64,000 bases of DNA, taken from IMG/VR virus record IMGVR_UViG_3300033049_000066, positions 186,001 through 250,000 of that record. One strand, given 5' to 3'. How positions within the stretch are numbered: the first letter of the stretch is position 1; each line of letters opens with the position of its first letter. The notes under the pieces were generated by a model, which worked only from the letters and a program-made list of their open reading frames with translations, had not been told where the DNA came from and did not search any database. Positions 35,401-53,749 of this stretch are shown one piece after another. Made by a program: the position numbers and the translations under genes.

Positions 35401-36637
35401 TCGTGTACGTTTTTCTACCAATGATGTTTGTTACGTTGATACTTGCTTCACTAGTTAAATCAATTATGTTTATAGTACCAAATAAATTCGGGTCTGACGC
35501 GTCTTGATAATACAATGTGTCAAGGGAGGCGGTTTCTGTCGGCACTCTCTCAAAGTGCTCGTCTGCGTCTTTGTAAAATACTACGTTTGCGTACTGTGTA
35601 CCGTACAAAATTGTAAATTGTTCACCTACGTTAATTAGCTGTAGTGGCACTAACCTTACGTAATCTGTACCTGCTACATCCTCGATATCGATTCTGTAGA
35701 CTTGGTATCTCTCTGCGTCGGTGACTACTGGGTTGCCGTCGTTCACCCACCCTAGGTTGTCGTCGCGCAAGAAAATTATTGTCTTGCTCTCTAGGTCTGT
35801 TTGTATCGGGAAAGTTGATTGGACGGTTGCTAGGGTCAGGTCGGCGATGGAATCCATGCGCTCGTCGGTCGCGATGTCCACGGTCCCAATGTCTGTGAAA
35901 TTATGAAAGGCAATCTGCGCATCGGCTGCTGGCACTACAAAATTTATTGTTCCGTCGTCGTCGCCGTTATTCGTCACGCCGAGAATTTCTCGAGAACTAA
36001 TGTTGCTTGCCCACGGTACTGTACCGTCGGTGCCTGGGTGTGTTTGAATCCAGAAATCTTGCCCCGCTTGCGACACGTTGAAATTATATGTTCCGCCACG
36101 TAAAAGTGTAAGTACAGGATTTGTTTGTGGCAGCCCTTCAATCGAAATTGAATCTGCGTTGGGCGTTACGTTGAAATCATCAGAGAGTAAAACATTGATG
36201 GCACTAACGTTGACGCTGTTGGGGCCTGCTGGTAACCAAAAATACTGACTGTAATTCACGATCTTATCAAATTCAATATAAGGTGACCAGCTATAAGCCT
36301 CTGAGCTAAATAATCGATCGTGATTGTCTACGTTTGCCCCAGCAGTTTTAAGTCCGTCTATTAGACCTATGTATGTAAGCGCGTCAGTGACATTGCCATT
36401 AACGTCGTTAAATATAACACCTGGTTCAAGTTGATAATTTGTACGGGTAACAGTTGGTTCATCTATGTACCCATCAGTTGGCGATTTACTCGGCGCATTA
36501 GTGCGACCGATATAACCTTGTGTTTGTTTTAGCTTTGGTTCTTGAATTAATTGATCAAGCGTTGAGTTTAAAAACTTTTTAGTTGTTGATGTTTGGAAAA
36601 TCTCTGGTAGGAAATCTACACTGCGAATTCTTGCCAT
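23420..36637 (-). CDS. giant (4405 aa) baseplate wedge / tail-associated structural protein
   Basis: Uninterrupted ORF directly after the gp6-like gene; internal propeller-like FG.S.A repeats; gp7-like position is inference. Confidence 0.8.
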   Translation of the reverse strand: MARIRSVDFLPEIFQTSTTKKFLNSTLDQLIQEPKLKQTQGYIGRTNAPSKSPTDGYIDEPTVTRTNYQLEPGVIFNDVNGNVTDALTYIGLIDGLKTAGANVDNHDRLFSSEAYSWSPYIEFDKIVNYSQYFWLPAGPNSVNVSAINVLLSDDFNVTPNADSISIEGLPQTNPVLTLLRGGTYNFNVSQAGQDFWIQTHPGTDGTVPWASNISSREILGVTNNGDDDGTINFVVPAADAQIAFHNFTDIGTVDIATDERMDSIADLTLATVQSTFPIQTDLESKTIIFLRDDNLGWVNDGNPVVTDAERYQVYRIDIEDVAGTDYVRLVPLQLINVGEQFTILYGTQYANVVFYKDADEHFERVPTETASLDTLYYQDASDPNLFGTINIIDLTSEASINVTNIIGRKTYTSPNGVVFTNGLKVRFTGDVLPVEFADNEYYVEGVGTAIKLVLVSDLIVPEPYAVGEPEPWDINPWDSSEWAATSSTPADQDYLTINRSSRDKNAWSRSNRWFHFDVLVATANYNSVTLELDNVQRAKRPIIEFDADLRLFNYGIIGKHTVHVIDFDNTDALSTVNGAIYESPTSSTGDPEAFIDGYKLGNGSRVIFAGDLDPTVRNVIYEVELIDINNDNTLRINLVPIVDGTSDVNDIIIIAKGTERQGTVYAFDGETWVVSQAKTGVNQPPLFDIFDIAGYSLSDELIYNDTTFAGSKIFSYAPGTGAIDTILGFSLQYLNIDNLGDIVFENNLYTDTFEYTVDTVLVPDTSITIGFVRKYSSYTEFTNNTGWVTSAESTHQAQVFDTVYTGDPITLDITPSASLSVPSVKISATGAFVTPENYTITSNVITFGTQTEIGTELNIRVISDEISETGYYEIPANLESNMFNENTSLLTLGTIRNHYNRLSENIFDLVGPVNGANNLRDLGEISKYGTLIVQQSSPLALTAMFLRNKEYNFFNSIEFAAKQYEKFKNRIINWVEENELGTMTVPQILDAAIKEINTGKTTASAFYWSDMLPSGLDYESTAHVITAISTQTVTTLNTYDFTTANTKALMVYHNNVLLTKDVDYTVATDGPRITLAVIPPTGDIITVNEYSSTLGTAVPSTPTKLGMYPKFVPLKFTDDTYVTPVDVIQGHDGSITVAHGDLRDDVLLEFENRIYNNLKVTETLPIEPADIVPGVFRQTEYTIDEVTQITATSVLSWLGWNRIDYKSQEYNATDEKTWNYSTATNKITGEKFQQANWRGIYNYFYDTDSPHIRPWEMVGLTKRPDWWNTSYGTAPYTSGNLVLWDDMEAGLIKEPGNERVDTRYVRPGLTSILPVDSAGNLVMPLTSVVSTSTSNDFKRSWTIGDNAPAESAWRKSSAWPFAVQRLYALTKPAQFFALMADRDRYAFSPTVQQYLYDERLRLDTRTIELSSESQVKHSYINWILDYNRYHGYNSEAALATSLSNLDVNLCHHMASFTDKNNLKIFTDKSSPDSTSSSLLLPDESFTLLLYKNQPQDEIIYSSVIVQRVDGGYSVTGNSTTDPYFRIQTAVSTGKYKAISVGAGSNATTVAVPLEFTDAFELVPYSQVFSSKQGVSEFLISYGEYLTRAGLQFNTVEATQVVNWGEMVQEFIYWSDQGWAIDSIINLNPSATEIEFERALHIVDDLNNLELTEQPQNQNREPLDISDYVVDRIDNNFKIRMVDNNIISYLKFNLTSFEHLLVLDNISIFNDLIYDPVTGIRQQRVNLSGFTTFEWNGQVDAQGFLINEDNVKAWAPVSSYNKGDIVNFKNAYWSATEKVQPSNTFDFSQWIKTDYDSINKGLLPNLATKSDQMLEYYNNKTANLETDIDLMAYGLTGFRSRDYLLALDLDDISQVNIYSNLIETKGTPKSLTLFKDVTLNNETVDYSIFENWAIKRAEYGATSTRAYIDLQLDDQQLTSNPSLVEIVDVTNSTSKSDMLINLDDIYKQSVKHLSTSVFTTLNETNYDTALPTAGFVQDDDVDIAVFEISEIDSTVTVVDGSIIWVAKDTEVDWNVYHATKIDAVIVTIEDNLDGTLTLVTDIPHNLLLDTTINVSNTDAQATGTYKVLSVPDVLEVVIKGALANNQTCVLDQTGTLLEFISARVEVPSSIVGTIFDSNLSATDTVWVNNDNSKTAVYKKTSPFTLADSEINPKDTSTRFGYSVAQGYNDSGMLVGDPASDSGVVHLYSKANDVYTFVQTLLPSSSLPVLQYGSAVTLIETWGAIAATGTTAGATADATLPTADSLVLANAVPAPGSVEIINRDATLNTITQTQTLVSPNYTVDVEDSFGASIAMSKDEEWLFVGEPLNNEVHTYQNVSGTFVFVSTIDYNTANNGVAFTSGDDFGAAIDVSTDARHIVIAAPAIEKAFIINRVVERFVITDASTLAYTTLRTPLGTVLNNGVALDASEFTIAGNVVTIVTGTAEAGDSLEVDIAEFKLIQDLAVPGMSATNSLAICKTKCSLYVGADGDLSGQGTVSRFENKSRTYGTLTSTVANPLIPANSTIRINNVDVALPFEGTSLLVADAINAAAIPNIDASEANGLLTIQLTNKIVRLNPNRLDILAGANISLVTLGFTPYAIAQTITSPVTTTVAQHFGNSLALDLSLDQLAVGTPDGIGDNISTSADTTSSTADNGLITTDASGNTGVVYTYDLMSGSDITSDMLLLGQEILDTDMYTGDAFGSAVSLIDGVLVVSAMNYDLNTATTSGVTADQTFTTADEDDVLASGGRPNIGRVVIFNNTANTLSWIASNTQNDQVDVTLINAVYMYNNDSLSVIRDLDYIDPLNGKILGAASQNIDFITPYDPTVYDNASAGLLWSADQVGKMWWDIKNVRFRDYTTGTAHQTSKVWGRTFTGSTVDIYQWTESTALPANYAGTGTILAEDKYVTVSTIDRSGLLQNVYYYWVRNVETISVNSEKTLSAAAVASYIEAPKSSGISFLAFVAPNLIGIYNCKDIINNTDTIIHIEYSKIKNENNVFVEYDLFRENHPNDFLSDGLYKKLQDSLVGIDTDGNIVPATGLTSAERYGVEFRPRQTMFIDRYAAIASYLKKVNGILASNTITESRAYPMLESEEAIPTASTGAWDLQVASTTELSFQDFTAVGTGFKYLVTTDDNNSGRWAIYEVTASLTFETLLQIDVQEYDTTQYWSTVNWYKEGFDPFSRIDFVVTEFTELATLGIIENNAVAKVTFNSVGSWELYQYIDGAWVRTALENGTIQLDERLWTTISTPVTELRNVIRSINEELLISDLATDRSRTMLSIFNYVLGEQPNVDWLIKTSLIDVTQKVRSLSQYAVYQKDNQDYLTQYLGEAKPYHTKIKDFSLSYDGFDLIAGTVTDFDCPSTFSTEFDQYISPILDDGAVLVSDPSNKPADDIVWQTPPWSEWYDNYKLTVKSVVVTNPGTGYTIAPEVVVTGASTSPAVMTALLGPGGIISEIVVVTPGSGYLTPPTISFTGSTGVDAAATAIMENALVRTFKVTAKYDRYEYVSKVAQYEENTVTSTRNLVFKYSGPKDIVQYDPTAVDPQLLELIIGAEYKIAAPGNTNFLAAGATSSNAGTTFTATASISNANPEPTGSVIELPKLFRVTTLYTDTDDNTVFDPTKFEEVAYITSEDGTRSYVTPTADTIILTADGSTEIVAGTAASDIFTADSIVLTADVDSISAISSIHSITADSAYGLDAIEIKYLKEGIASWYELDGVIVNENNNSESRNFVRYNNKVYNMITFEDTTTFLSTKYVEIELETLSGIDRTTGFYVSDVNRPGLDLSLLFNGISFPGVQVDGDTFSVTESELDTIYESQFLDTYLGTRPEDINVDGGAFVDEFHSHAPEELVPGAIYDTLDIKVFARPGSDYLTDGHAFALSSFSYTVNASTESFSFADAVPHPITVIVANITTGLTLYETLDFTVDWADQEIDIISGITAGDDIKIIVYEVGGGNQLYRNSLRGSDTTANAFTVDVRSTEINKALVFVNGVEDAGVTITAVDDQTSTLTLSAAPSPTDFITVTIFGISTGGFEESYPLVELWTGDLTVDPGTSVTGKSRHNAIVEVNGSRLRPPSAARTTADGVTTNFLYPLNGGYSGDAVADNEVDVYVNDTLLASGIDYVTGPLGVDRYVILGTAPAAGDTVEVYVRTSSEYWYSGTEILFTNTYTGSDQIAVTTFRDLRELDILTQVYQGPTIASVEELNAFDSASFDTEDFDFVIGANASVNVFTLDRDIIIAQDRLWVTLNGNRIHPGTGFSIINDNQLVIAGPTISVTDVVVVTSITENVITAGSTFRLFKDMRDTVGMYKMASTTSTYLTQDLSLSDDIIYVADASVLGTPDLTAAKFGIIIINGERITYREQDLLANTVSGLRRGTAGTGATAHLAGDIVGDVSLKGRVPWNYDQIWYASGAITASNGVPLQDQSTVPALFIKP

Positions 36638-39600
36638 TTACACTGCCCCGTTTTGTATGTTGCTTGCTGTCAGCGCATCAATTATTGATACGTCATCAAC
36701 TGTTGCTGCACTTGTAAAAATCTCATATGGTGCAGATCTAACTTCATATAAGCTACCGAACTGCTCAGTGGCAGTCTTCGGTACGATCACTATTGACGCA
36801 ATAATATCACCTAGCTCGGAATGTACAAACGCTGCTAGCTCGGAGAAATAAAATGTGTCTCCGAAGTCCCATATATCAATGTCAAAATATTTATTAATGG
36901 ATGAGATCACCTTGCTTTTTATTTCGCTGTCGCTTGTAACCACGTTGTTCAGCTTCACTACTTTGATGAAAGATTGTAAGTTTGTGTTGGCCTTTGCTCC
37001 GAAGAGTGGCTTAAATCTAACGCTGTTTAACACGATGTTATCACTTGTCATCTTGCTTTCGTTTAAAGATTGATATAGCACTGTTAGCTCGTCTGTCGTT
37101 GGCACTGCTGGTTCTGCTACAGTATTCGTAACGTCTTGAATGTACTGTAAGAACGCTTCATGATAACTTGATGTTACAACATACAAATCAATGATATTTG
37201 TTATGCTAGGATTGATGCGCCTGGTCTCTGGGCTATTGTGTCTGTACTGGAAATTTAGTTGGTCGCGGCCAATTTCTACGCTGAAGTCTGTGCGCTCGGC
37301 TATATTCGTTACGTTGTTAATAAAAGTTAATTCAAAGAATTTATTATCTGTCGTCGCATAAAATAATTGCCCGGTTGGGTATTCAGTCTTAACTAAATCA
37401 ATAGCTGCTTCAGTTGCGTACTCGTCATTGATATTAGTTGACAAAAAAGGCAGCTGGCGTTCTAAGCCATCAAAGTCGGTTGTTGTCTGGAAGTAAACAT
37501 GTTTGCCAGTATACGCTCCCGCTTCGTTTACTAATGTTCTAAAAAAGTCTGGATCATCGGCTATGCCATCGTTATCGCCGTCAGTAAAGCTAACTTCTAC
37601 AACGTAATCATTGACGTACCCGTCGGACTGTACACTTTGATCGATAATATCCATAACAACGTCAGTTGATAATGGTTCACTAGAGTCCGGTTTACTATTC
37701 GTCTTTAAAACGTTAATGAAATCGTTAACAATAAGGCCGGTACGTGGGTCAAAGATTCGTCTCGAGTTGTCAAAGAAGAAGCGTGTTTCAAGTATGCTTG
37801 AAAAATAGTAATGTAGCGATTTTGACGATACTGTATAAATTTGTGATGATGCTTCAAATTTAAGAAGCCATGTATCTAGTCCCAAGTCAGCTTCGTCTAT
37901 AATTGACCATATGCCAGTGAACTGATCAAAGCCGACGCCAAAGTCACGATATAATTCTACTAGGGCTAGCATCTCTTGAGTAATTTCTGCTGGTAGGTCG
38001 GAACTAAACACCGGGATAATCTCCGATGCGATTGATTCTGACGGTACAAAATTGTTCAGTTTGACTGGGCCAACTGTTCCAGGACTAGCTGCGGTTATAG
38101 AGCCATTTGCCGTACCTTCTAACTCTACGTCGGTTATTGTAGCCCATATTATTAATTTGTCGCCAACTGCTGTTAGTTCTGCACCAAGTACTAATCTATT
38201 TGATGCGCTAAAATGCCAGCCAACCGGCGGTACAAACTTAATAAGAGCTTGTGGTGCGAAATATTGCCTGTCATCAGTTGTGTAATCCGGGCCAATGGGT
38301 CTTGCGTTACCTGATCCGTCTTTAAAATAGCCCGATGTGCTGTTTGTTGCGGTGGTAAGTTGAGTCCATTGTAGTTCGCCAGATGACGTTGAAACTGACA
38401 CTCTTGTAAAATTCTCGTAGTAGTACTGGGTCATACTCCGTGCAGCAAGGACCGGCTCTACTTGATTTCTAAATACCGAATTAATATCATTTGTGTCATT
38501 AAACGTAAAGTTAAATGTTTCCACTGTAGCATCGCTATGGACTAGGCCATCACTAGCAAATGCGTTGATGCTCGAGTACTTGCCGGTCGGGTCAACTAAA
38601 TCTAAGTAGCGGCTGGCGCCTATGTTGGTTCTGTTGATGGCCTTGCTTTTTGTAATGCTGCTGAACGCCGTGTACGGAAAATTATTATAATCTTCGCCGT
38701 TGACCATTCTGTTCTGCGTGTAGAAACGTGCCGGCGCTCTGCGTTTTATATCTGCGATGCGCTCTGGGCCCTTGGCGTTTGATACTGGTTGTGTGAGACC
38801 TATCGTCAGCGTCAATGTTTCAGCTCTGCCGGTTTTGCTCGTGTACCCGATGGTCACGTCTACATTCTGTATTTCTTCTGGGTTGATGACATATTCTTGA
38901 CCGTTGCTTTCACGGATGAAAGCGCGGAAGGTACCTACTGGTATTTCACTAAATACGCCATCACCGAAGTTGAACGAAATGCGGTCATCGGCCCGACTTG
39001 TTTCACTATAAAATTTTCTTTGATCTGCTGCTATCTGTGTATTGTTCGCGGCGTAAATATTGCCTACGCCTGTCCATACGTCGTTAAATGCGCCAGATTC
39101 TGTGTCGGCACGGAACAACCACACATCATCGTTATTTACTCCTGCTCTATCAATATCAATTGTCCGGTTCGCAATTCTCTCAGTTAGCGTAAAATCCTGA
39201 GTTTGTAATATCCCCTGCTTGAAGTAAAAGAAGTATCCGGTATTTACACTAGCAAATCCTTGATTGTCATTTCTGTATAGCAAGTTGAACTGGCCATCTG
39301 CACTTGGTGCTGGTTCATAGATTGTGTTTGTTCCAAGCGATGTACCATTGACTATTTCAAAGTCCATAGAGCTCCCGTCTACGGTCGCGGTAAATGGGAC
39401 TACTGGTAAGAAGCCTGAGGCCATGTTAATTTCGTATTCGTCAGTTTGTATCCCGACAATCGTATTTGTGTTTCCTGGTTGGCCGATTTTTTGGCTGTCG
39501 ATTAAGGCCGCATTTAGTATAGATGTAAGCTGCTCCTGCCAATCGTCGTTTGTTCTGTCATTCCATCGTACTGTAATATTGCTAAGGTTATTTCTATTGT

Positions 39601-39994
39601 AATCAGTAATATTTTCTGTGGTTGTAGCGGCGAGGACTTTTAAGAACCCACGTGCGGTTTCATTCCGCTTTGGCGTGTAGCCAACTAATGTGGCCAGGTT
39701 ATTGACACTATCGGTTCGTTCAGCTGTGTCTAAGAAGTTTTCACGTGTATTTAAATCGCTGCGGAAGGCTAGGCCTTGCCCCATAAATGCCATTAGGTCC
39801 AGCATCGCAATGTACTCTGAACTTTCAGTAAAATCGTTAAAGGTCTCTGGGTGATGCTGGCGTAAATAATCTACGAAGGTTTTGCGAATTGTTTCAAAAT
39901 TGTAACTTTGCAGATCGGCTTCGGCGTATGTTTTGTAGATACGCTTCCAATCTTCAGTTCCGAATATCGCAGTTTGTCGTGTCGTCTTGGCCAT
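36638..39994 (-). CDS. gp6: baseplate wedge subunit (gp6-like)
   Basis: NDFTESSEYIAMLDLMAF, NTRENFLDTA, and IKRRAPARFYTQNRMVNGEDY (gp6 Q.R.V...DY motif). Confidence 0.85.
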   Translation of the reverse strand: MAKTTRQTAIFGTEDWKRIYKTYAEADLQSYNFETIRKTFVDYLRQHHPETFNDFTESSEYIAMLDLMAFMGQGLAFRSDLNTRENFLDTAERTDSVNNLATLVGYTPKRNETARGFLKVLAATTTENITDYNRNNLSNITVRWNDRTNDDWQEQLTSILNAALIDSQKIGQPGNTNTIVGIQTDEYEINMASGFLPVVPFTATVDGSSMDFEIVNGTSLGTNTIYEPAPSADGQFNLLYRNDNQGFASVNTGYFFYFKQGILQTQDFTLTERIANRTIDIDRAGVNNDDVWLFRADTESGAFNDVWTGVGNIYAANNTQIAADQRKFYSETSRADDRISFNFGDGVFSEIPVGTFRAFIRESNGQEYVINPEEIQNVDVTIGYTSKTGRAETLTLTIGLTQPVSNAKGPERIADIKRRAPARFYTQNRMVNGEDYNNFPYTAFSSITKSKAINRTNIGASRYLDLVDPTGKYSSINAFASDGLVHSDATVETFNFTFNDTNDINSVFRNQVEPVLAARSMTQYYYENFTRVSVSTSSGELQWTQLTTATNSTSGYFKDGSGNARPIGPDYTTDDRQYFAPQALIKFVPPVGWHFSASNRLVLGAELTAVGDKLIIWATITDVELEGTANGSITAASPGTVGPVKLNNFVPSESIASEIIPVFSSDLPAEITQEMLALVELYRDFGVGFDQFTGIWSIIDEADLGLDTWLLKFEASSQIYTVSSKSLHYYFSSILETRFFFDNSRRIFDPRTGLIVNDFINVLKTNSKPDSSEPLSTDVVMDIIDQSVQSDGYVNDYVVEVSFTDGDNDGIADDPDFFRTLVNEAGAYTGKHVYFQTTTDFDGLERQLPFLSTNINDEYATEAAIDLVKTEYPTGQLFYATTDNKFFELTFINNVTNIAERTDFSVEIGRDQLNFQYRHNSPETRRINPSITNIIDLYVVTSSYHEAFLQYIQDVTNTVAEPAVPTTDELTVLYQSLNESKMTSDNIVLNSVRFKPLFGAKANTNLQSFIKVVKLNNVVTSDSEIKSKVISSINKYFDIDIWDFGDTFYFSELAAFVHSELGDIIASIVIVPKTATEQFGSLYEVRSAPYEIFTSAATVDDVSIIDALTASNIQNGAV

Positions 39995-46324: not shown

Positions 46325-48295
46325 ATGGCTAAACGGAAAAAGAATTATTTAAATAACAAGGATATGCTCAAGGAAATTCACCTTAGCAAAATATCATATT
46401 GTGCGTTTACTGACAAGGTAGAGGACAATCAACAAGATTTCATCGTGGAAAGTGCTGACGCGATCTTCGGTACGCAGAATGTAGAGGTTAAGAAAGAAAC
46501 CGAAACCTCAGCTGCGGTTTTTGAAGACATCCCGGTAATACAGCTTGCGAGAAAAGCTAGGGCAGCGAGACTTACAAAATTAGAAATTCCAACTGCGGTA
46601 GAAGATATAGTTGACACAGATATTGTATTTCGTGTAATGACGAACGAACACATTCCACGAGTCCCCAAGAAAAAATCCAAGGCACTACTAGCAAAAGAAG
46701 CAAAGCAAGCGAAATCCGACGCGATTTTTGACGAGCTTATGGATGGCGACGAGGATGGCGACGCTCCTACACCCACCGGGCCTGAGGTTATCTTGATCCC
46801 AATGCGTGTAAATTTTCCACCGTTTTTCCATTACCGGTTGACGGATGAACCGGGTGAACTAAAACTTGTCGGCAAATCCCACTGGCGTGGTGACTTAGAA
46901 ACAGGCAGTTTCAACAAGACCAAGGGGCAAACTACAAACAATCTTGCTATGATGTACATCAAGCTCTGTGAGCGGTACGGCACTAGAGGCAATTGGAGAG
47001 GGTATTGTGTAGATCAGGCCACAGAGGCTCTCACAGACCGTGGGTGGTTATTTGAAAATGAGATTACCGAAAATGATAAAATTTTATCATATAATGGCTC
47101 GACTATGGTTTGGTCTAACATTAATTCTATGTTTCGGGATAATTACAGTGGATTAATGCATAAACTTACATCTCGTAGCATCGATTCACTAATCACACCA
47201 AGTCATAAAATTGTAACCGATAAGGGGTTACTAAAGATTGAATATCTCAAAGAATCAGACCGGGTCGTTGTAATGGGTGATGCTGTGCCTACGGAGTTTG
47301 AGAAAACATACACAGATCAACTAGTTGAATTAGCTGGATGGATCATAACAGAAGGTAATTATCAACCCAAAAAGAAAATTGTTACGATTTATCAAAACGA
47401 AGGTTCTTATGCCGACCGCATACGTAAATGTTTACATAACTTAAATTACTCGTTTTCTGAACGCAAATCTTCGAAATCCGAGAATATTTCATTTGCTATT
47501 AAGAGGAAGTACTGGGATGAAATCACAAATCTATTACCTAACAAAAATCTAACTATGGATTTTATTTTAAAACTTACGTATAATCAACGTGAATTATTAG
47601 TTAAAACAATGGTGGATGGTGATGGACACAGACACGGATTATTAATGCGATATACTCAGAAAAATAAAGAACACATGGATCATTTTCAAACGTTATGTGC
47701 GCTAATTGGGTTAAAATCAAATGTTCATTATGTCGAGAATAAAATGTCATTCGGTAAGCCGGTTAACTATTATGTAACAAATGTGTTTTCAAAACGAGGA
47801 AACTACACACGTGGATCGGCTATCGACATGCACGGTGGGAAAGACAATGGGAGTAGACACGTCGGCAAGGGGAAATTTTTCCACCCCAACAAGCCCACGG
47901 TGCAGTACGATGGTACGGTATGGTGCCCGGAGACTGACTACGGTTGCTTCTTAGCTAGGCGTAACGGAAAAGTATATTTGACCGGAAATACGTACAACGA
48001 TGAAATGCAGGGGCAGGCTTTACTCCAGCTTTCGCAAATTGGACTTCAGTTCAATGAGCTAAAATCGCAGAATCCATTTGCGTACTACACTGCCGCGGTC
48101 ACGAACAGTTTTACCCGGGTCTTAAACATTGAGAAAAAGATGCAAAATATCCGAGACGATATCCTCGAGTCAAATGGGCTCACTCCTAGCTGGACAAGGC
48201 AATACGCGAATGATGCGAAAAAGATGCCCCAGTATGATTACAATCTAAATGATCCCAGGAAGAAAAAGGCCAAAGAAGAGGAACCTAAAACTTAG
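46325..48295 (+). CDS. gp55: gp55-like late-transcription sigma factor (intein-containing)
   Basis: KKNYLNNKD, NWRGY/TYNDEM, NPFAYYT..NSF.R....EKK once the intein is removed (about 328-aa extein). Confidence 0.85.
   Translation: MAKRKKNYLNNKDMLKEIHLSKISYCAFTDKVEDNQQDFIVESADAIFGTQNVEVKKETETSAAVFEDIPVIQLARKARAARLTKLEIPTAVEDIVDTDIVFRVMTNEHIPRVPKKKSKALLAKEAKQAKSDAIFDELMDGDEDGDAPTPTGPEVILIPMRVNFPPFFHYRLTDEPGELKLVGKSHWRGDLETGSFNKTKGQTTNNLAMMYIKLCERYGTRGNWRGYCVDQATEALTDRGWLFENEITENDKILSYNGSTMVWSNINSMFRDNYSGLMHKLTSRSIDSLITPSHKIVTDKGLLKIEYLKESDRVVVMGDAVPTEFEKTYTDQLVELAGWIITEGNYQPKKKIVTIYQNEGSYADRIRKCLHNLNYSFSERKSSKSENISFAIKRKYWDEITNLLPNKNLTMDFILKLTYNQRELLVKTMVDGDGHRHGLLMRYTQKNKEHMDHFQTLCALIGLKSNVHYVENKMSFGKPVNYYVTNVFSKRGNYTRGSAIDMHGGKDNGSRHVGKGKFFHPNKPTVQYDGTVWCPETDYGCFLARRNGKVYLTGNTYNDEMQGQALLQLSQIGLQFNELKSQNPFAYYTAAVTNSFTRVLNIEKKMQNIRDDILESNGLTPSWTRQYANDAKKMPQYDYNLNDPRKKKAKEEEPKT
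47006..47989 (+). mobile_element. class-1 intein with LAGLIDADG endonuclease (328 aa)
   Basis: Cys1 (CVDQATEALT), TPSH block B, LAGWIITEG and LVKTMVDGDG, VWCPET, terminal TGN, +1 Thr. Confidence 0.92.
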
Positions 48296-48304
48296 CCCGA
48301 CGGA

Positions 48305-48361
48305 TATACTCTAAACATTTGCGATTGTTGTTGTTTTATCGTATAATATGTTTAGCGTATA
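48305..48361 (+). promoter_or_regulatory. promoter (TTGCGA 48319-48324, 17 nt, TATAAT 48342-48347) enclosed by a 14-bp inverted repeat
   Basis: TATACTCTAAACAT / ATGTTTAGCGTATA, one mismatch. Confidence 0.7.
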
Positions 48362-48431
48362 TTCACCAGCATGGAATAGATCCTAGCAACCGGCAGAGTT
48401 GTAGATGTACGTAAATGACGGATAATAATAA

Positions 48432-49445
48432 ATGAGTCAACTGTTTAAGAAGGCAATGATCTTCACTGATATACATTTTGGGCTAAAAAGTAATAGTCAG
48501 CAGCATAACAAAGATTGTGAAGACTTTGTGCAATGGGCAATAAAAACCGGCAAGGAGCATGGCTGCGAGACTGGCATGTTCTTGGGAGATTGGCATCATC
48601 ATAGATCATCAATTAATTTGCAAACTCTAAACTACAGTTTACGAAGTCTGGAACGGTTAAATGATGAGTTTGATAATTTCTACTTTATTCCTGGCAATCA
48701 TGATTTGTACTACCGCGACAAGCGTGATATACACGGCATTGAGTGGGCTAAACATCTTCCAAATATAACAATTTGCAATGATTGGTTTCATCAAGATAAT
48801 GTATCAATTGTTCCGTGGTTGGTCGGCGACGATTACAAAAAATTAATAAAAATAAAAGCCAAGTACATGTTCGGCCACTTCGAGCTTCCGCACTTTAAAA
48901 TGAATGCGTTAGTTGAGATGCCGGATACTGGCACTGTGAAAAGTTCGCAGTTAGCAAATGTCGAAAAGGTCTTTAGTGGGCATTTTCACATGAGGCAGGT
49001 TCGTGGCAATGTCACGTACATCGGCAATTGTTTCCCGCACAATTTTTCGGATGCTGGGGATGACCAGCGTGGGGTGATGATTCTCGAGTGGGATAAGGAA
49101 CCGAAATTTTTTGCCTGGCCTGATCAACCCCTATACAAGGTCGTGAATTTAAGTACGCTCCTTGACGATGCGGATTCTATTCTCGGACCGAATATGCACG
49201 TGAAGGTCAATCTCGACATTGACGTCAGCTATGAAGAAGCAAATTTCATCAAGGAAACTTTCGTCGAGAAATATAAACTGCGTGAAATTAGTTTGATTCC
49301 TTTGAAGGAACAAGAATTTGAAGACGATAATAATCAGGCTGTCTCGTTTAACAGTGTTGATACTATCATACACGAACAAATCGCCGCAATCGAAAGTGAG
49401 TTTTATAAAACTGGATTGCTAATGGAAATATATAACAACCTTTGA
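48432..49445 (+). CDS. gp47: recombination endonuclease subunit (gp47/Mre11/SbcD-like)
   Basis: FTDIHFG, FLGDWHH, PGNHD, GHFE, SGHFH. Confidence 0.93.
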   Translation: MSQLFKKAMIFTDIHFGLKSNSQQHNKDCEDFVQWAIKTGKEHGCETGMFLGDWHHHRSSINLQTLNYSLRSLERLNDEFDNFYFIPGNHDLYYRDKRDIHGIEWAKHLPNITICNDWFHQDNVSIVPWLVGDDYKKLIKIKAKYMFGHFELPHFKMNALVEMPDTGTVKSSQLANVEKVFSGHFHMRQVRGNVTYIGNCFPHNFSDAGDDQRGVMILEWDKEPKFFAWPDQPLYKVVNLSTLLDDADSILGPNMHVKVNLDIDVSYEEANFIKETFVEKYKLREISLIPLKEQEFEDDNNQAVSFNSVDTIIHEQIAAIESEFYKTGLLMEIYNNL

Positions 49446-49452
49446 GAAAACT

Positions 49453-50250
49453 ATGAACGAAAAAACAATACATTTTATCGCTGGTTTACCACGTGCAGGT
49501 AGTACGCTACTCTGTAACATTTTAAATCAAAATCCAAGATTTCATGCTACAAGCACCTCGGGCATTTTAGACATTGTACTCGCTATACGCAACCAATGGG
49601 AAAATGTTAACGAATTCCAAGCAACTCCAAATAAGCTCGGAAAAGACGCAGTAATGAAACCAATTTTACAAAATTACTATTCAACAGTCGAGAGGCCGGT
49701 TGTATTTGACAAGTCGAGAGGATGGCCCGGGTATTTAGAACTTGCTGAACATTGTCTAGGCACAAAAGTCAAGATGATTGTCCCGGTTCGTAGAGTCGTA
49801 GATATTCTCGCTTCGTTTGAAAAATTAACAAGAAACAATTCACGGACTTGGCAAATGCCGCAAGAGAAATCACACTTCTTTGAGATGCAGACGCTCGCTG
49901 GTAGGGCAGATGTTTGGATGAGAAACGATCAGCCTGTGGGCATTGCCTACAATCGCGTAAGAGATGCGATAGACAGGGGCTTTGGCGAACAACTACATTT
50001 TGTGGAATTTGAAAATTTAACCGCGCATCCTGAGGCTACAATGGCTGCTTTGTACGAGTTTCTCGGTGAGGTGTATTTTGCGCATGATTTTTTAAATGTT
50101 GAGCAAAGCACAAATGAGAACGATGACGTCCATGGTATCCCTGGACTCCACACGATCCGACAGGTAGTGAAGCCGTTTGACGTAGATGCTAAGAAAATCA
50201 TCGGAGCGGATGCTTACAAGAAATACGAAAATGCGGAATTTTGGAGATAG
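49453..50250 (+). CDS. PAPS-dependent sulfotransferase
   Basis: FIAGLPRAGSTLL 5'-PSB loop, FDKSR, VR...DILAS, VEFENL...PE..M..LYEFLG. Confidence 0.85.
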   Translation: MNEKTIHFIAGLPRAGSTLLCNILNQNPRFHATSTSGILDIVLAIRNQWENVNEFQATPNKLGKDAVMKPILQNYYSTVERPVVFDKSRGWPGYLELAEHCLGTKVKMIVPVRRVVDILASFEKLTRNNSRTWQMPQEKSHFFEMQTLAGRADVWMRNDQPVGIAYNRVRDAIDRGFGEQLHFVEFENLTAHPEATMAALYEFLGEVYFAHDFLNVEQSTNENDDVHGIPGLHTIRQVVKPFDVDAKKIIGADAYKKYENAEFWR

Positions 50251-50254
50251 ATAA

Positions 50255-53218
50255 TTGATTAAAATTAAAAGTTTGGTTGTAAAAAACTTTATGAGTATCG
50301 GAAACGCAAGTCAAGCCGTGGACTTTGACCGTGATGACTTGACCCTCGTTCTTGGGGAGAATCTTGATCTTGGGAGCAATGGTGCGAGAAATGGTACCGG
50401 GAAGGCGCAACCGTTGTACTCAAAAATAAAAACACCCGGTGGCTGGGCTACAATGGGCGATATGGTCGTTGGGCAAGCCATCACCACACCTACCGGGGGC
50501 AGTGCTGAGGTCAGTGGCGTTTTCCCACAGGGTGAGGTAGAAACATACAGAATTCATTTTTCTGATGGTAGGCAAACAGATGCTTGCAAAGACCATCTGT
50601 GGAAAGTTTACTCGCACTCGTTTAAAGATAAATGGCAGGTTCTAACTACTGCTGAGTTAATTTCGCATACAGAAAAATATAAAAATCATAAAAATAAATC
50701 TACGTACTACAAATATGTTCCGTTGATTATCCCAGAAAATATTGCAGACATTAAGTTGCCATTTGATCCATATTTCCTTGGCGCGATGCTCGGAGACGGT
50801 GGCATGACCGTACACGGTATCGGGTTTACAACTGCTGATGACGAAATGTTTGAAAATATGAAACAGGTTCTGCCAGAAAATTATCAGATAACAAAAAATC
50901 ATTATGATGACTACGGATATTCATTAAAATTTATTAATCGAAAAAAGTACAGCACATTACGACTAGGATTATCTGCGCTGAAGTTATACGGAACGAAATC
51001 AGCAACGAAATTTATTCCAGAAATATATAAAAATGCCTCCATTAATCAAAAAATAGAACTTATACAAGGGATAGTAGACACCGACGGTTATGTCGCAAAG
51101 AAAAACGGGTCACTTTCTATTACAACCGTCAGCAAGCAAATGGCGGATGATATTCAAGAAATAATACAGTCTATTGGCGGGATCGCTAAAATAAAAATTA
51201 AAACGAACTGTGGGTATAAAAAAGACGGCATATTTATACCATGTCAGGACGCCTACACCGTTTGCATCACATACCATACTCCAAAACTTTTAGCTCGACT
51301 TAGCCGGAAAAAAGATCTCTTACCGGGTGAGAATTATCAGTACAAAAATAGAAAATTAAGAATCGATCATATAGAATATATTGGTAAGATTGAATCCCAA
51401 TGTATTATGGTCGAACACTCAGATCACTTATACATTACAGACAATTATATTGTTACACATAATACGACGTTGATAAACGCTCTGAGCTATGGGCTGTACG
51501 GCAGTGCGCTTTCTGAGATTCGCGTGAACAATCTTGTCAACAAAACTAACAGAAAAAATATGCTCGTGTCGGTTGAGTTCAGCATCGACGAGGCGCAGTA
51601 CAGAATTGAAAGGGGCAGATCTCCAAATGTGCTGAAATTTTACAAAAATGATCTTGAGCAGAAGGATGAGGATGGTGCGCAGGGCGAGAACAGGGAAACG
51701 CAAAAAGAGATAAATGATCTACTGGGGCTGAGTCACGCGATGTTCAAACACGCTGTCGCGCTAAACACCTACACCACCCCGTTTCTGTCTCTCAAGAATG
51801 CTGACCAGAAAGATATTATCGAGGAGCTTCTCGGAATCACTGTCCTTACCGAGAAGGCCGAGGCACTGAAAGCGGTCAACAAGATCACAAAGGATGGGGT
51901 CAAGGAAGAAGAATTCCGGCTTGAGACTATCATGAAGGCGAATCTGCGAATTGACGAACAGATTGAGGGGTTGAAGCGCCGGCAGCGGATGTGGCAGATC
52001 TCCCACAATAACACAGTAGATGGTTATACTTCAAAGATTGAAAAATTGATGGTGGTCGACATCGAAGACGAGATTGCTAAGCATAACCGCAATGCGAAAA
52101 TCCGGGTTGATACTGACAAGAAAAACACCAAGGGCAAAGCAGCAGTTGACAAATTTAACGCTGAACTAAAAATTCAAAAGGATCGTGAGATTGCCGCCAT
52201 TGACAAATTCAACTCTGCTGTGCTAGAATGTAATCGGTGGATCAAACAAATTGAAAATGATACAAAGGCCCAGGAGCGTCGGTCGCAAGCGTTACAAAGA
52301 GATATTGATTTACTAGAAGATCACAAGTGCCACGCCTGCGGGCAGGATCTCCATGATGAGACACAGGAAGCAAATATTGCGGCTAAGAAAACAGAATTAA
52401 CAGAATGTGCAATGCAGATTCTATCTAATCAAACGCAGGATACAGAGCAGAAACTAAAACTTGCGGACCTTGGCTCACCGCCGGTAACAAAAGAAGCTAA
52501 GAAAGCCAAAACGTTCAAAGAAGAGCAGTACAAGGGCAACCTCACTTTTTACAAAACCATCGACGAGGCTCACGGACACAAGAGCTCGCTCGCTACGCTC
52601 ACATCGCAGCTTGAAACCGCTGTAGACACTGCTGATCCGTACGTTGAACAAGTAGACGAAATGGTTGCTAGTGGGCTAGTTGAGGTCTCTTACGAATCTT
52701 TAAATCAGCTTGTCGAGCTACAAGAGCATCAGGCATTTCTACTAAAACTTTTAACGAGCAAAGATAGTTTCATTCGCAAGAAAATCATTGAGCAAAATTT
52801 AGCGTACTTGAATGGGCGGCTTACATATTACCTCACTGAAATCGGGCTTCCGCATCGTGTGCGGTTCATGTCGGATCTTAGCGTTGAGATTACAGACTTG
52901 GGCAGAGACCTGGACTTTGACAATTTGTCACGGGGTGAGAGGACTAGGCTGATTTTGTCTCTGTCTTGGGCGTTTAGGGATGTCTGGGAAAGTCTGTACA
53001 GCCACATCAACTTACTTTTTGTAGACGAGCTTGTCGACAATGGACTTGACACAAATGGCGTCGAAGCCGCTATTAAAATTATGAAAAGTATGGCGAGGGA
53101 GCGTGGGAAAAGTGTTTGGCTGGTCTCGCACAGAGAAGAATTAATTAGCCGCGTGAATAACACAATGAAAGTGATTAAGAGCGGTGGCTACACTGAATAC
53201 AGTAGCGAATTAGAATAG
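50255..53218 (+). CDS. gp46: recombination ATPase (gp46/Rad50/SbcC-like, intein-containing)
   Basis: KNFMSIG, Walker A NGTGK/TT split by the intein, CHAC zinc hook, LSRGE, LFVDE, LVSH. Confidence 0.95.
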   Translation: MIKIKSLVVKNFMSIGNASQAVDFDRDDLTLVLGENLDLGSNGARNGTGKAQPLYSKIKTPGGWATMGDMVVGQAITTPTGGSAEVSGVFPQGEVETYRIHFSDGRQTDACKDHLWKVYSHSFKDKWQVLTTAELISHTEKYKNHKNKSTYYKYVPLIIPENIADIKLPFDPYFLGAMLGDGGMTVHGIGFTTADDEMFENMKQVLPENYQITKNHYDDYGYSLKFINRKKYSTLRLGLSALKLYGTKSATKFIPEIYKNASINQKIELIQGIVDTDGYVAKKNGSLSITTVSKQMADDIQEIIQSIGGIAKIKIKTNCGYKKDGIFIPCQDAYTVCITYHTPKLLARLSRKKDLLPGENYQYKNRKLRIDHIEYIGKIESQCIMVEHSDHLYITDNYIVTHNTTLINALSYGLYGSALSEIRVNNLVNKTNRKNMLVSVEFSIDEAQYRIERGRSPNVLKFYKNDLEQKDEDGAQGENRETQKEINDLLGLSHAMFKHAVALNTYTTPFLSLKNADQKDIIEELLGITVLTEKAEALKAVNKITKDGVKEEEFRLETIMKANLRIDEQIEGLKRRQRMWQISHNNTVDGYTSKIEKLMVVDIEDEIAKHNRNAKIRVDTDKKNTKGKAAVDKFNAELKIQKDREIAAIDKFNSAVLECNRWIKQIENDTKAQERRSQALQRDIDLLEDHKCHACGQDLHDETQEANIAAKKTELTECAMQILSNQTQDTEQKLKLADLGSPPVTKEAKKAKTFKEEQYKGNLTFYKTIDEAHGHKSSLATLTSQLETAVDTADPYVEQVDEMVASGLVEVSYESLNQLVELQEHQAFLLKLLTSKDSFIRKKIIEQNLAYLNGRLTYYLTEIGLPHRVRFMSDLSVEITDLGRDLDFDNLSRGERTRLILSLSWAFRDVWESLYSHINLLFVDELVDNGLDTNGVEAAIKIMKSMARERGKSVWLVSHREELISRVNNTMKVIKSGGYTEYSSELE
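50405..51463 (+). mobile_element. Ala-start class-3 intein with LAGLIDADG endonuclease (353 aa)
   Basis: Ala1 (AQPLYSKIKTPGGW), DHLW, SQCIMV, IVTHN then +1 Thr; FLGAMLGDG and IQGIVDTDG. Confidence 0.92.
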
Positions 53219-53749
53219 CTACTTATAATAAAAGTTAGTAGTACTAAACTCCTCGAAGAGTTTACTCAAACCTTTTGTTAATTTACGAGATTTGGGATAA
53301 GGTGGTACTTTCTTTTTAGGATATTTTGCTTTGAAAAGTTTGATCATTTTATTATAGGATGATTTTTTAACTTTTTGAGCTTTAGGAACCTCGGATGGAT
53401 GGATATAAACCTCCCCGTCTTCGGTATACGCACCGGCTTCTAAGTAGTCAGCTAAGTTGCGTAAAAATGTAGGAAGATCGGTCGGGTGTTTGGATTCATC
53501 GGCCCCATAATAACGTTTCCAATTATTCGTTATTTTTCCTTCAATGGCATTTGCCCGGAACTCAATCGCATTGCGAATTGTTCCTTTGTTAGGTGCGTAA
53601 GGCTCGGAATTTAGCTTATGTATATGATCTAACACGCATTTGTCGATAGGGATTTTAATCCCCAGTAATGGACAAACTTCGTTATTTTGTTTATGAAGTT
53701 TTTCTTTAAGGATCTTGATATCCTTGACTTTGAGCTCGACGTATTGCAT
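53219..53749 (-). CDS. endonuclease VII (gp49)-like His-Me nuclease
   Basis: LDHIH, G.IR...., NAIEG, FLRNLADYL..IHP match my recollection of T4 gp49; Zn cysteines mostly absent. Confidence 0.75.
   Translation of the reverse strand: MQYVELKVKDIKILKEKLHKQNNEVCPLLGIKIPIDKCVLDHIHKLNSEPYAPNKGTIRNAIEFRANAIEGKITNNWKRYYGADESKHPTDLPTFLRNLADYLEAGAYTEDGEVYIHPSEVPKAQKVKKSSYNKMIKLFKAKYPKKKVPPYPKSRKLTKGLSKLFEEFSTTNFYYK

What the first reader, a model, noticed from the sequence alone, without database searches (positions are those of the whole stretch)
50405..51463. Class-3 (Ala1, WCT-triad) intein in the Walker A of gp46/Rad50
Seen: the intein starts with Ala (no N-terminal nucleophile) right after the P-loop Lys (GTGK/T). 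It has Trp two residues after the block-B His (DHLW, 50600-50602), block-F Cys (51401-51403) and block-G Thr-His-Asn, plus two LAGLIDADG motifs. Established: the W-C-T triad defines class-3 inteins, which splice via a block-F Cys branched intermediate and were first described in phage DnaB-type proteins. Inference: a class-3 intein in an SbcC/Rad50 ATPase may be a little-described host/site combination. The locus thus carries two mechanistically different inteins within 4.5 kb.
Basis: partly seen in the sequence, partly recalled or inferred. Interest (0 to 1): 0.72.

Follow-up and report, generated by a model that had tools for sequence, protein, structure and literature searches.

The report
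Class-3 intein in phage Rad50 P-loop
A 353-residue self-splicing, mobile protein insert (an intein of the rarer "class 3" type) interrupts the ATP-binding loop of the Rad50-like recombination ATPase of an uncultured marine jumbo phage. It is real and still spreading in nature, but it is a new member of a large known family, not a new kind of element.

Summary
Window 50405-51463 (+) is a 1059-bp, 353-aa insert in the gp46/SbcC/Rad50 gene (50255-53218), between the Walker A Lys and Thr (GTGK/TTL). A natural empty allele fixes both borders: a JGI contig 99.94% identical over 5 kb lacks exactly these 1059 bp. One seawater run holds both alleles.

The insert has Ala1, His64, Trp66, Cys333, Thr351-His352-Asn353 and Thr+1, plus two LAGLIDADG motifs with their Asp residues. 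It aligns end to end with the prototype class-3 intein of mycobacteriophage Bethlehem (E 3e-26). Its best mini-intein structure matches are the solved class-3 DnaB inteins. W, C and T are invariant in 80 relatives.

The family is very large (17,452 representative clusters) and mostly targets GK/T sites of P-loop NTPases. At least 35 further metagenomic gp46 clusters carry it at the same site. So do two cultured phages: Salicola SCTP-2 (unannotated) and Lactobacillus LfeInf (annotated "putative intein").

The class-3 reading is well supported by sequence and homology, but the splicing chemistry is untested. Verdict: new member of a known kind, moderate interest.

The parts
50255..53218 (+). gp46/SbcC/Rad50-like ABC ATPase gene (987-aa precursor; 634-aa mature protein after splicing)
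   Evidence: ORF and translation. The spliced form P0003 matches PHROG 77 'SbcC-like subunit' at E 2e-91. tblastn gives 45% identity to the PA5oct recombination endonuclease subunit. Signature LSRGE, Walker B LLFVDE and a CHAC zinc-hook motif are visible.
50381..50404 (+). N-extein half of Walker A (GARNGTGK); Lys-1 is the last residue before the intein
   Evidence: Relatives without the insert read GxxNGxGK-TT.
50405..51463 (+). Intein, 353 aa (Ala1 to Asn353), HINT splicing domain split by a LAGLIDADG endonuclease domain
   Evidence: Exact absence in L002 and in a contig of run X2. AF2 model with pLDDT 94.9. Foldseek matches to PI-SceI/TliVMA over the full length and to class-3 MchDnaB1/Msm DnaB for the HINT part. 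GC 37.7% against 45.1% in the exteins.
50585..50602 (+). Block B core C61-K-D-H64-L-W66 (B:7 Cys, B:10 His, B:12 Trp)
   Evidence: His and Trp are invariant in 80/80 relatives; Cys at B:7 occurs in 61/80.
50777..50803 (+). First LAGLIDADG motif (LGAMLGDGG, Asp131)
   Evidence: Asp in 77/80 relatives.
51062..51088 (+). Second LAGLIDADG motif (IQGIVDTDG, Asp227)
   Evidence: Asp in 79/80 relatives.
51401..51403 (+). Block F position 4 Cys333, the predicted class-3 initiating nucleophile
   Evidence: Aligned with Cys124 of MchDnaB1 and with the block F Cys of the Bethlehem intein. Invariant in 80/80 and 159/159 relatives.
51455..51463 (+). Block G Thr351-His352-Asn353 (G:5-G:7)
   Evidence: all invariant in 80 relatives.
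51464..51466 (+). Thr+1: C-extein nucleophile and Walker A Thr
48432..49445 (+). gp47/SbcD/Mre11-like nuclease partner gene
   Evidence: PHROG 100 'SbcD-like subunit' at E 5e-60. A weak Metallophos hit.
47006..47989 (+). Second, unrelated intein (328 aa, Cys1 ... Thr-Gly-Asn / Thr+1) in the gp55-like late sigma factor gene 46325-48295
   Evidence: Homologues in E. coli jumbo phages lack the insert: two pieces cover query 4-626 within 771 nt. No significant similarity to the gp46 intein (E 0.18).

Best explanation
This is a full-length, mobile class-3 intein in the Walker A motif of the phage Rad50/SbcC (gp46) ATPase. The gene is translated as a 987-aa precursor with a split P-loop, so the precursor cannot act as an ATPase (inferred). 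Splicing is predicted to follow the class-3 route. Cys333 (block F:4), helped by His64 and packed by Trp66 and Thr351, attacks the Lys-1/Ala1 peptide bond. This forms a thioester branched intermediate on the intein. The N-extein then moves to the hydroxyl of Thr+1, Asn353 cyclises with help from His352, and an O-N shift restores GTGK-TTL. The product is identical to the natural intein-free protein (shown: P0003). At DNA level, the embedded two-motif LAGLIDADG endonuclease is predicted to cut the empty GGTACCGGGAAG|ACGACGTTGATA site in co-infecting phages. Repair from the filled allele then copies the intein in (homing). Shown: the exact borders, the presence/absence polymorphism, the patchy spread and the conservation. 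Inferred: the chemistry and the nuclease activity.
For: Borders and mobility:
- The empty allele is 99.94% identical and lacks exactly 1059 bp, with no flanking repeats.
- Run X2 holds the empty joint at word depth 16.3 and intein-internal contigs at depth 3-7. Run X1 holds only the filled allele, at depth 359.
- A second filled/empty pair lies within one 90% cluster (P0125/P0326 against P0323-P0327).

Class-3 signature:
- Ala1, H64, W66, C333, T351-H352-N353 and Thr+1 are present.
- H, W, C, T, H and N are invariant in 80 relatives, while position 1 varies among A, S, D, G, F and E.
- Among 159 aligned copies (158 from the best 150 representatives plus the window's own), W is kept in 158, C in 159 and T in 157. 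Ala1 occurs in 122 and a preceding GK in 132.

Homology to proven class-3 inteins:
- BLASTP against the Bethlehem TerL ('MP-Be DnaB') intein gives E 3e-26 over the full length, with W, C and THN/T in register.
- phmmer against PDB hits MchDnaB1 (6rix/6riy) and Msm DnaBi1 (6bs8).
- In Foldseek the best mini-intein matches are these same class-3 structures, TM 0.77-0.81 by target length.
- There is no significant similarity to two class-1 LAGLIDADG inteins.

Selection and spread:
- dN of the intein is 0.15 against 0.30 for the extein. Omega is roughly 0.05-0.12 in both the HINT and the endonuclease parts, but dS is saturated.
- The three filled alleles of the window's clade each nest among empty alleles, yet their inteins are each other's closest (78% identity).
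- At least 6 gains or losses are needed on the extein tree.

Literature definitions: PMC5222942, PMC3196547, PMC5050341, PMC7664689.
Against: - No experiment: neither splicing, the block-F branched intermediate nor endonuclease cleavage has been shown for this intein or for any gp46 allele.
- The intein starts two residues earlier (Ala-Gln-Pro...) than MchDnaB1 in the alignment.
- It has Cys at B:7 where class-3 inteins usually have Asp (PMC6195587), so details of N-junction activation may differ.
- Seven sister clusters carry Ser1, which could allow a class-1 first step in those alleles.
- I built no formal phylogeny with class-1 and class-2 outgroups.
Confidence: 0.87

Rival explanations
1. 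This is a class-2-type intein: with no N-terminal nucleophile, Thr+1 attacks the Lys-1/Ala1 peptide bond directly and Cys333 is only structural. The scoring scheme of the 2026 preprint, which knows only classes 1 and 2, would file it this way.
For: Ala1 and an intact block G His-Asn plus a +1 nucleophile fit that scheme.
Against: Class-2 inteins are reported only in KlbA proteins (PMC3196547). W-C-T is invariant in 80 relatives, and the intein is homologous to experimentally class-3 inteins. As general chemistry, a Thr hydroxyl is a poor nucleophile for direct attack on an amide.
Confidence: 0.03
2. This is a decaying or splicing-dead intein. The filled allele would be a gp46 null, carried because the function is dispensable or supplied in trans by co-infecting empty-allele phages or by host SbcCD.
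For: Splicing is untested. In run X2 the filled allele is the minority. A class-3-like pseudo-intein is documented (PMC3196547).
Against: All catalytic residues are intact and invariant. Omega is well below 1 in both domains. In run X1 the filled allele is the only form seen, at word depth 359. The isolated phage Salicola SCTP-2 carries a filled allele. The documented pseudo-intein had lost the F:4 Cys and the B:10 His, which this one keeps.
Confidence: 0.06
3. This is a permanent Rad50-Hint-endonuclease fusion in which the intein-borne nuclease replaces Mre11, as the 2026 preprint suggests for such viral proteins.
For: That is the domain architecture as seen by domain-co-occurrence screens.
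Against: An SbcD/Mre11 gene lies 0.8 kb upstream (48432-49445). An otherwise identical allele without the insert exists. The insert splits the Walker A motif and keeps every splicing residue.
Confidence: 0.01

Closest known systems
[quoted passage not shown] 2010; Kelley et al. 2016, PMC5050341)
   Same: It is a full-length HINT plus two-motif LAGLIDADG intein in a phage P-loop ATPase with no N-terminal nucleophile. H-x-W, the block F Cys and THN/T lie in register, and the two are homologous end to end (E 3e-26, 23% identity). The Bethlehem intein was shown to splice and its nuclease to cut an intein-less allele.
   Different: The host protein is the terminase, not Rad50, and the insertion site is not the GK/T of Walker A. 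Its first residue is not Ala in the same register. B:7 is Ser there and Cys here.
MchDnaB1 and Msm DnaBi1 class-3 mini-inteins (PDB 6rix/6riy, 6bs8; PMC7664689, PMC6195587)
   Same: They are the best solved-structure matches for the splicing domain. They have Ala1, W-C-T and a Ser/Thr at +1, and their insertion site in DnaB is an ATP-binding P-loop.
   Different: They are bacterial mini-inteins without an endonuclease. They have DxxH in block B, and their N-terminus is two residues shorter in the alignment.
Inteins of Lactobacillus phage LfeInf gp087 ('endonuclease', GenBank 'putative intein') and Salicola phage SCTP-2 gene 539 ('hypothetical protein')
   Same: They share the host family (SbcC/Rad50-like) and the site (GK / AQP... 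HN / S or T). They are homologous inteins (E 8e-37 and 4e-41).
   Different: Identity is only 28%. LfeInf has Phe-Cys-Ser in place of Trp-Cys-Thr. The GenBank intein feature of LfeInf starts 32 residues downstream of the GK/AQP junction read here. The SCTP-2 intein is not annotated.
PI-SceI / TliVMA / PI-PfuI (class-1 LAGLIDADG inteins with solved structures)
   Same: The overall two-domain architecture is shared (TM 0.58-0.70 by query length).
   Different: They have Cys1 and class-1 chemistry, show no W-C-T and are 13-15% identical.

Membership tests
Class-3 inteins | HINT fold with splicing blocks A, B, F and G | tested here: met
   AF2 model with pLDDT 94.9. Foldseek matches to inteins, probability 1.00. 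phmmer hits to intein chains.
Class-3 inteins | No Ser/Thr/Cys nucleophile at intein position 1 | tested here: met
   Ala1. The junction is fixed by the empty allele.
Class-3 inteins | Trp at B:12, two residues after the B:10 His | tested here: met
   DHLW, W66. Aligned to the Trp of MchDnaB1 and of the Bethlehem intein. Present in 80/80 relatives.
Class-3 inteins | Cys at F:4 | tested here: met
   C333. Aligned to the catalytic Cys of MchDnaB1 and to the block F Cys of the Bethlehem intein. Present in 159/159 aligned copies.
Class-3 inteins | Thr at G:5, with His G:6 and Asn G:7 | tested here: met
   T351-H352-N353.
Class-3 inteins | Ser or Thr (rarely Cys) at +1 | tested here: met
   Thr+1. 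Among relatives, T in 131, S in 27 and C in 1.
Class-3 inteins | Belongs to the single class-3 clade | tested here: inconclusive
   Significant full-length similarity to a proven class-3 intein, and none to two class-1 LAGLIDADG inteins. The nearest solved mini-inteins are class 3. No formal tree with class-1 and class-2 outgroups was built.
Class-3 inteins | Splicing starts at Cys F:4 through a block-F branched intermediate; mutating it blocks splicing and N-cleavage | not testable with these tools
   This needs expression and mutagenesis.
Class-2 inteins | Direct attack by the +1 residue; known only in KlbA hosts; no W-C-T | tested here: not met
   W-C-T is present, +1 is Thr and the host is SbcC/Rad50. 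Definition from PMC3196547.
LAGLIDADG homing endonucleases (two-motif, intein-borne) | Two LAGLIDADG helices, each ending in an acidic residue followed by Gly; fold like PI-SceI or I-DmoI | tested here: met
   Pfam LAGLIDADG_3 and Hom_end above cut-off. Asp131 and Asp227 are conserved. Foldseek matches to PI-SceI and I-DmoI.
LAGLIDADG homing endonucleases (two-motif, intein-borne) | Cuts the intein-less allele and drives homing | not testable with these tools
   Indirect support only: co-existing filled and empty alleles, a patchy distribution, and an intein less diverged than the extein.
SbcC/Rad50/T4 gp46 ABC ATPases (host protein) | Walker A, signature and Walker B motifs, coiled coil with a CxxC hook, and an SbcD/Mre11 partner gene nearby | tested here: met
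   PHROG 77 at E 2e-91 and SbcD PHROG 100 at E 5e-60. AAA_23 and SMC_N in the empty alleles. Motifs are visible.

The most novel reading that the evidence does not exclude
Splicing of this intein may be conditional rather than constitutive. The unusual Cys at block B:7 (Cys61, present in 61 of 80 relatives) lies beside the N-terminal junction. It could form a reversible disulfide with the catalytic Cys333, as Cys48-Cys118 does in the Msm DnaBi1 class-3 intein. In that case the phage Mre11-Rad50 nuclease would be activated only under reducing conditions or at a set time in infection. Separately, the natural Ala1/Ser1 pairs that keep W-C-T at one orthologous site (for example P0126 and P0124) would allow a direct test of how class-1 and class-3 chemistry interconvert.
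Probability: 0.1. Interest if true: 0.7.

Novelty: new member of a known kind. Interest (0 to 1): 0.36.

Why it matters
The finding adds the phage Rad50/SbcC recombination ATPase to the proteins that carry class-3 inteins. SbcC and SbcD are near-universal in jumbo phages (PMC7824862). The main intein surveys I read do not mention this host (PMC4760082, PMC5050341, the 2025 actinobacteriophage preprint).

It also shows that the 'Rad50-Hint fusions' noted in a 2026 preprint are ordinary mobile inteins of class-3 type. They are not Mre11 replacements and not class-2 inteins.

The practical value is a natural filled/empty allele pair with identical flanks, found in the same seawater study. This gives a ready substrate for splicing and homing assays and a way to follow an intein invasion in a wild phage population.

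It does not change what is known about how inteins work.

Tried and rejected
- Megablast of the gene against 50,697 phage records found nothing. The phage has no close cultured relative; the nearest are PA5oct-like Pseudomonas jumbo phages at 45% protein identity.
- A search of the window's own 293-kb record found no second copy of this intein.
- I looked for the prototype intein in the Bethlehem DnaB-like gene (gp62, 273 aa), but that gene has no insert. The intein lies in gp11, next to the portal gene, now called TerL.
- The paper that widened the class-3 definition (PMC3133030) is not held. My recollection that it admits class-3 inteins with Ser1 is therefore unverified.
- dN/dS is only rough because dS is saturated.
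- The counts of filled and empty alleles on the tree are biased, because one search used the intein-bearing query. Only the minimum of 6 changes and the local nesting should be trusted, not frequencies.
- Full-text searches for 'Rad50 intein', 'SbcC intein' and 'gp46 intein' found no paper.
- The structure tool returns no coordinates, so the Cys61-Cys333 distance could not be measured.
Full report
**What is in the sequence**

The window comes from a 293-kb IMG/VR virus record, estimated 83% complete. It is a jumbo phage. Its SbcC-like protein is 45% identical to that of the Pseudomonas PA5oct group. It carries a T4-type portal gene and T4-type baseplate genes. Sequencing runs that hold it are seawater metagenomes.

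ORF 50255-53218 (+) starts at a TTG. Homologues that begin M-I-K-I-K support this start. It encodes 987 aa. Residues 1-50 end in GARNGTGK and residues 404-987 begin TTLINAL.

The 353 residues between them begin AQPLYSKIKTPGGW. They contain DACKDHLW, two LAGLIDADG motifs and IESQCIMVEHSDHLYITDNYIVTHN.

**The borders are fixed by nature, not by motif reading**

The protein search returned a 634-aa protein (P0003) that equals the precursor minus residues 51-403. Its contig L002 (JGI sample 3300033048, 5028 bp) aligns to window 47155-50404 and 51464-53241 with two mismatches. Both mismatches lie far upstream, and the contig reads GGG AAG | ACG ACG at the joint.

- There are no direct repeats at the borders, so this is not a transposon-type insertion.
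- The insert has 37.7% GC against 45.1% in the exteins.
- The filled allele also occurs in JGI sample 3300029226.
- In run X1, one contig at word depth 359 carries the filled allele.
- Run X2, from the same study, has a contig joining 50404 to 51464 (skipping 1059 bp) at depth 16.3. It also has four short contigs inside the intein at depth 3-7, one of which crosses the C-terminal border.

Both alleles therefore coexist, with identical flanks, in one natural population. A second filled/empty pair lies within a single 90% cluster of a different lineage.

**Host gene**

The spliced protein matches PHROG 77, 'SbcC-like subunit of palindrome specific endonuclease', at E 2e-91. ORF 48432-49445 matches the SbcD-like PHROG 100 at E 5e-60. 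Empty relatives carry the Pfam domains AAA_23 and SMC_N. The C-extein keeps the ABC signature, Walker B and a CxxC hook. A sulfotransferase gene lies between the two nuclease genes here. In a relative they abut.

**Class-3 test**

The literature defines class 3 as follows (PMC5222942, PMC3196547, PMC5050341, PMC7664689):
- no Ser/Thr/Cys at position 1;
- usually Ser or Thr at +1;
- a single clade;
- splicing that starts at Cys F:4 through a block-F branched intermediate.

All the sequence features are met. They are in register with proven members:
- phmmer against PDB sequences hits the class-3 MchDnaB1 (6rix/6riy) and Msm DnaBi1 (6bs8) inteins. H-x-W, Cys and THN all align.
- BLASTP against the Bethlehem intein gives E 3e-26 over 368 columns, again with all key residues aligned. 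This is the prototype on which the class was defined, and it was later shown to splice and to cut its empty allele.
- Two class-1 LAGLIDADG inteins show no significant similarity: the window's own gp55 intein and the Bethlehem RDF intein.

An AlphaFold2 model built on an 80-sequence alignment is confident, with pLDDT 94.9 and pTM 0.92. Foldseek matches it over the full length to PI-SceI, TliVMA and PI-PfuI. For the splicing domain alone, the best matches are the class-3 structures, with TM 0.77-0.81 by target length.

In the 80-sequence alignment His64, Trp66, Cys333, Thr351, His352 and Asn353 are invariant, while position 1 varies.

I did not build a formal tree with class-1 and class-2 outgroups, so clade membership is supported but not proven. 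The chemistry cannot be tested here.

**How common it is**

The intein belongs to a very large family. The exhaustive search found 17,452 representative proteins at E<=1e-3 and 4,683 at E<=1e-30. I aligned 159 copies: 158 from the best 150 representatives plus the window's own intein. Of these:
- 132 follow Gly-Lys;
- 122 start with Ala;
- 158 keep Trp, 159 keep Cys and 157 keep Thr.

Hosts of the nearest relatives outside gp46 (45-53% identity) are ClpB/ClpX-type AAA+ proteins, an AAA_5 protein, PhoH and an SF2 helicase. In cultured phages the nearest relatives sit in SF2/Snf2 helicases and terminases of jumbo phages. The family is thus a guild of class-3 inteins that target Walker A GK/T sites. 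Kelley et al. call this the 'classic' P-loop site, and the 2025 actinobacteriophage survey discusses nucleotide-binding sites as a route for extein switching.

Within gp46/SbcC itself, 35 further protein clusters carry the intein at the same site. Of the 34 for which I read the first residue, 28 start with Ala and 6 with Ser. All 35 keep W-C-T.

Among 50,697 deposited phage genomes, only three records hold a filled allele:
- Salicola phage SCTP-2 gene 539, annotated 'hypothetical protein', lies beside a 'T4gp47 homologue'.
- Lactobacillus phage LfeInf_087 is present as two records. Its 'putative intein' feature starts 32 residues downstream of the junction I read, and its intein has Phe-Cys-Ser instead of Trp-Cys-Thr.

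A July 2026 preprint lists viral 'Rad50-like ATPase fusions with Hint domains', LfeInf included. It scores them only as class 1 or class 2 and suggests that the intein nuclease replaces Mre11. The present locus argues against that reading. SbcD is present, the insert is precisely absent in a sister allele, and the signature is class 3.

The large bacterial and archaeal survey and the mycobacteriophage survey do not mention Rad50 or SbcC. Phrase searches found nothing either.

**Evolution**

The window's nearest filled relatives (P0020, P0022) share 78% intein identity with it but only 64-65% extein identity. The closest exteins (71-74% identical) are empty.

On an extein-only tree of 179 proteins, the three filled alleles of the window's clade each nest separately among 25 empty ones. 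Starred branches force at least six gains or losses overall. The sample is enriched for filled alleles, so frequencies mean nothing.

At DNA level, intein dN is 0.15 against 0.30 for the extein. Omega is about 0.05-0.12 in both the splicing and the endonuclease parts, with saturated dS. Both activities therefore appear to be maintained, and the intein is younger than the split between its hosts. This is what homing between diverged phages predicts.

**Verdict**

The class-3 interpretation is supported by signature, homology, fold and conservation, but the mechanism is untested. The host protein is a little-described one for inteins, though not unprecedented, and the site is the classic one. 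This is a new member of a known kind.

The extra value lies in the natural filled/empty pair and the within-sample polymorphism. Two details deserve a bench test: Cys at B:7 next to the catalytic Cys333, and the Ser1 sister alleles that keep W-C-T.

Noticed in passing
window 47006-47989 (in ORF 46325-48295): A second, unrelated 328-aa LAGLIDADG intein lies in a gp55-like late sigma factor. It has Cys1, TPSH in block B, no Trp at B:12, a penultimate Gly (Thr-Gly-Asn) and Thr+1. Its C-terminal blocks resemble the Bethlehem RDF class-1 intein. Homologues in E. coli jumbo phages lack the insert, while Synechococcus phages B3 and B23 appear to carry a related one.
   Followed up: partly
window 49453-50250: A sulfotransferase gene (Pfam Sulfotransfer_3, E 3e-15) sits between the SbcD and SbcC genes. 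In the relative L009 the two nuclease genes abut, so it looks like a lineage-specific insertion.
   Followed up: partly
window 50585-50587 (intein Cys61, block B:7): Block B reads CxxH rather than the TxxH of class-1 inteins or the DxxH of mycobacterial class-3 inteins. Cys is present here in 61 of 80 relatives. It is a possible disulfide partner of the catalytic Cys333.
   Followed up: partly
proteins P0124, P0138, P0143-P0146, P0156 (metagenomic gp46 alleles): These inteins at the same gp46 site start with Ser instead of Ala but keep Trp-Cys-Thr. The Ala/Ser change has happened in at least two intein sublineages (for example P0126 against P0124).
   Followed up: partly
L004:1390-4383 (Lactobacillus phage LfeInf_087): The same-site intein has Phe-Cys-Ser instead of Trp-Cys-Thr. 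The GenBank 'putative intein' feature begins 32 residues after the GK/AQP junction, so the deposited borders look wrong.
   Followed up: no
L003:1354-4119 (Salicola phage SCTP-2 gene 539): This gene is annotated 'hypothetical protein'. It is a gp46/SbcC homologue with an unannotated class-3-type intein at the Walker A GK/T site.
   Followed up: partly
window 23420-36637 (-): A single 4405-aa ORF, followed by a 1118-aa ORF (36638-39994), lies among virion structural genes. I did not examine it.
   Followed up: no
window 53219-53749 (-); L010:3694-4911: An endonuclease VII/HNH-like gene lies directly downstream of gp46 in the window. In the relative L010 a SegE-like GIY-YIG homing endonuclease gene lies downstream of its filled gp46. 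The neighbourhood seems to collect mobile nucleases.
   Followed up: no
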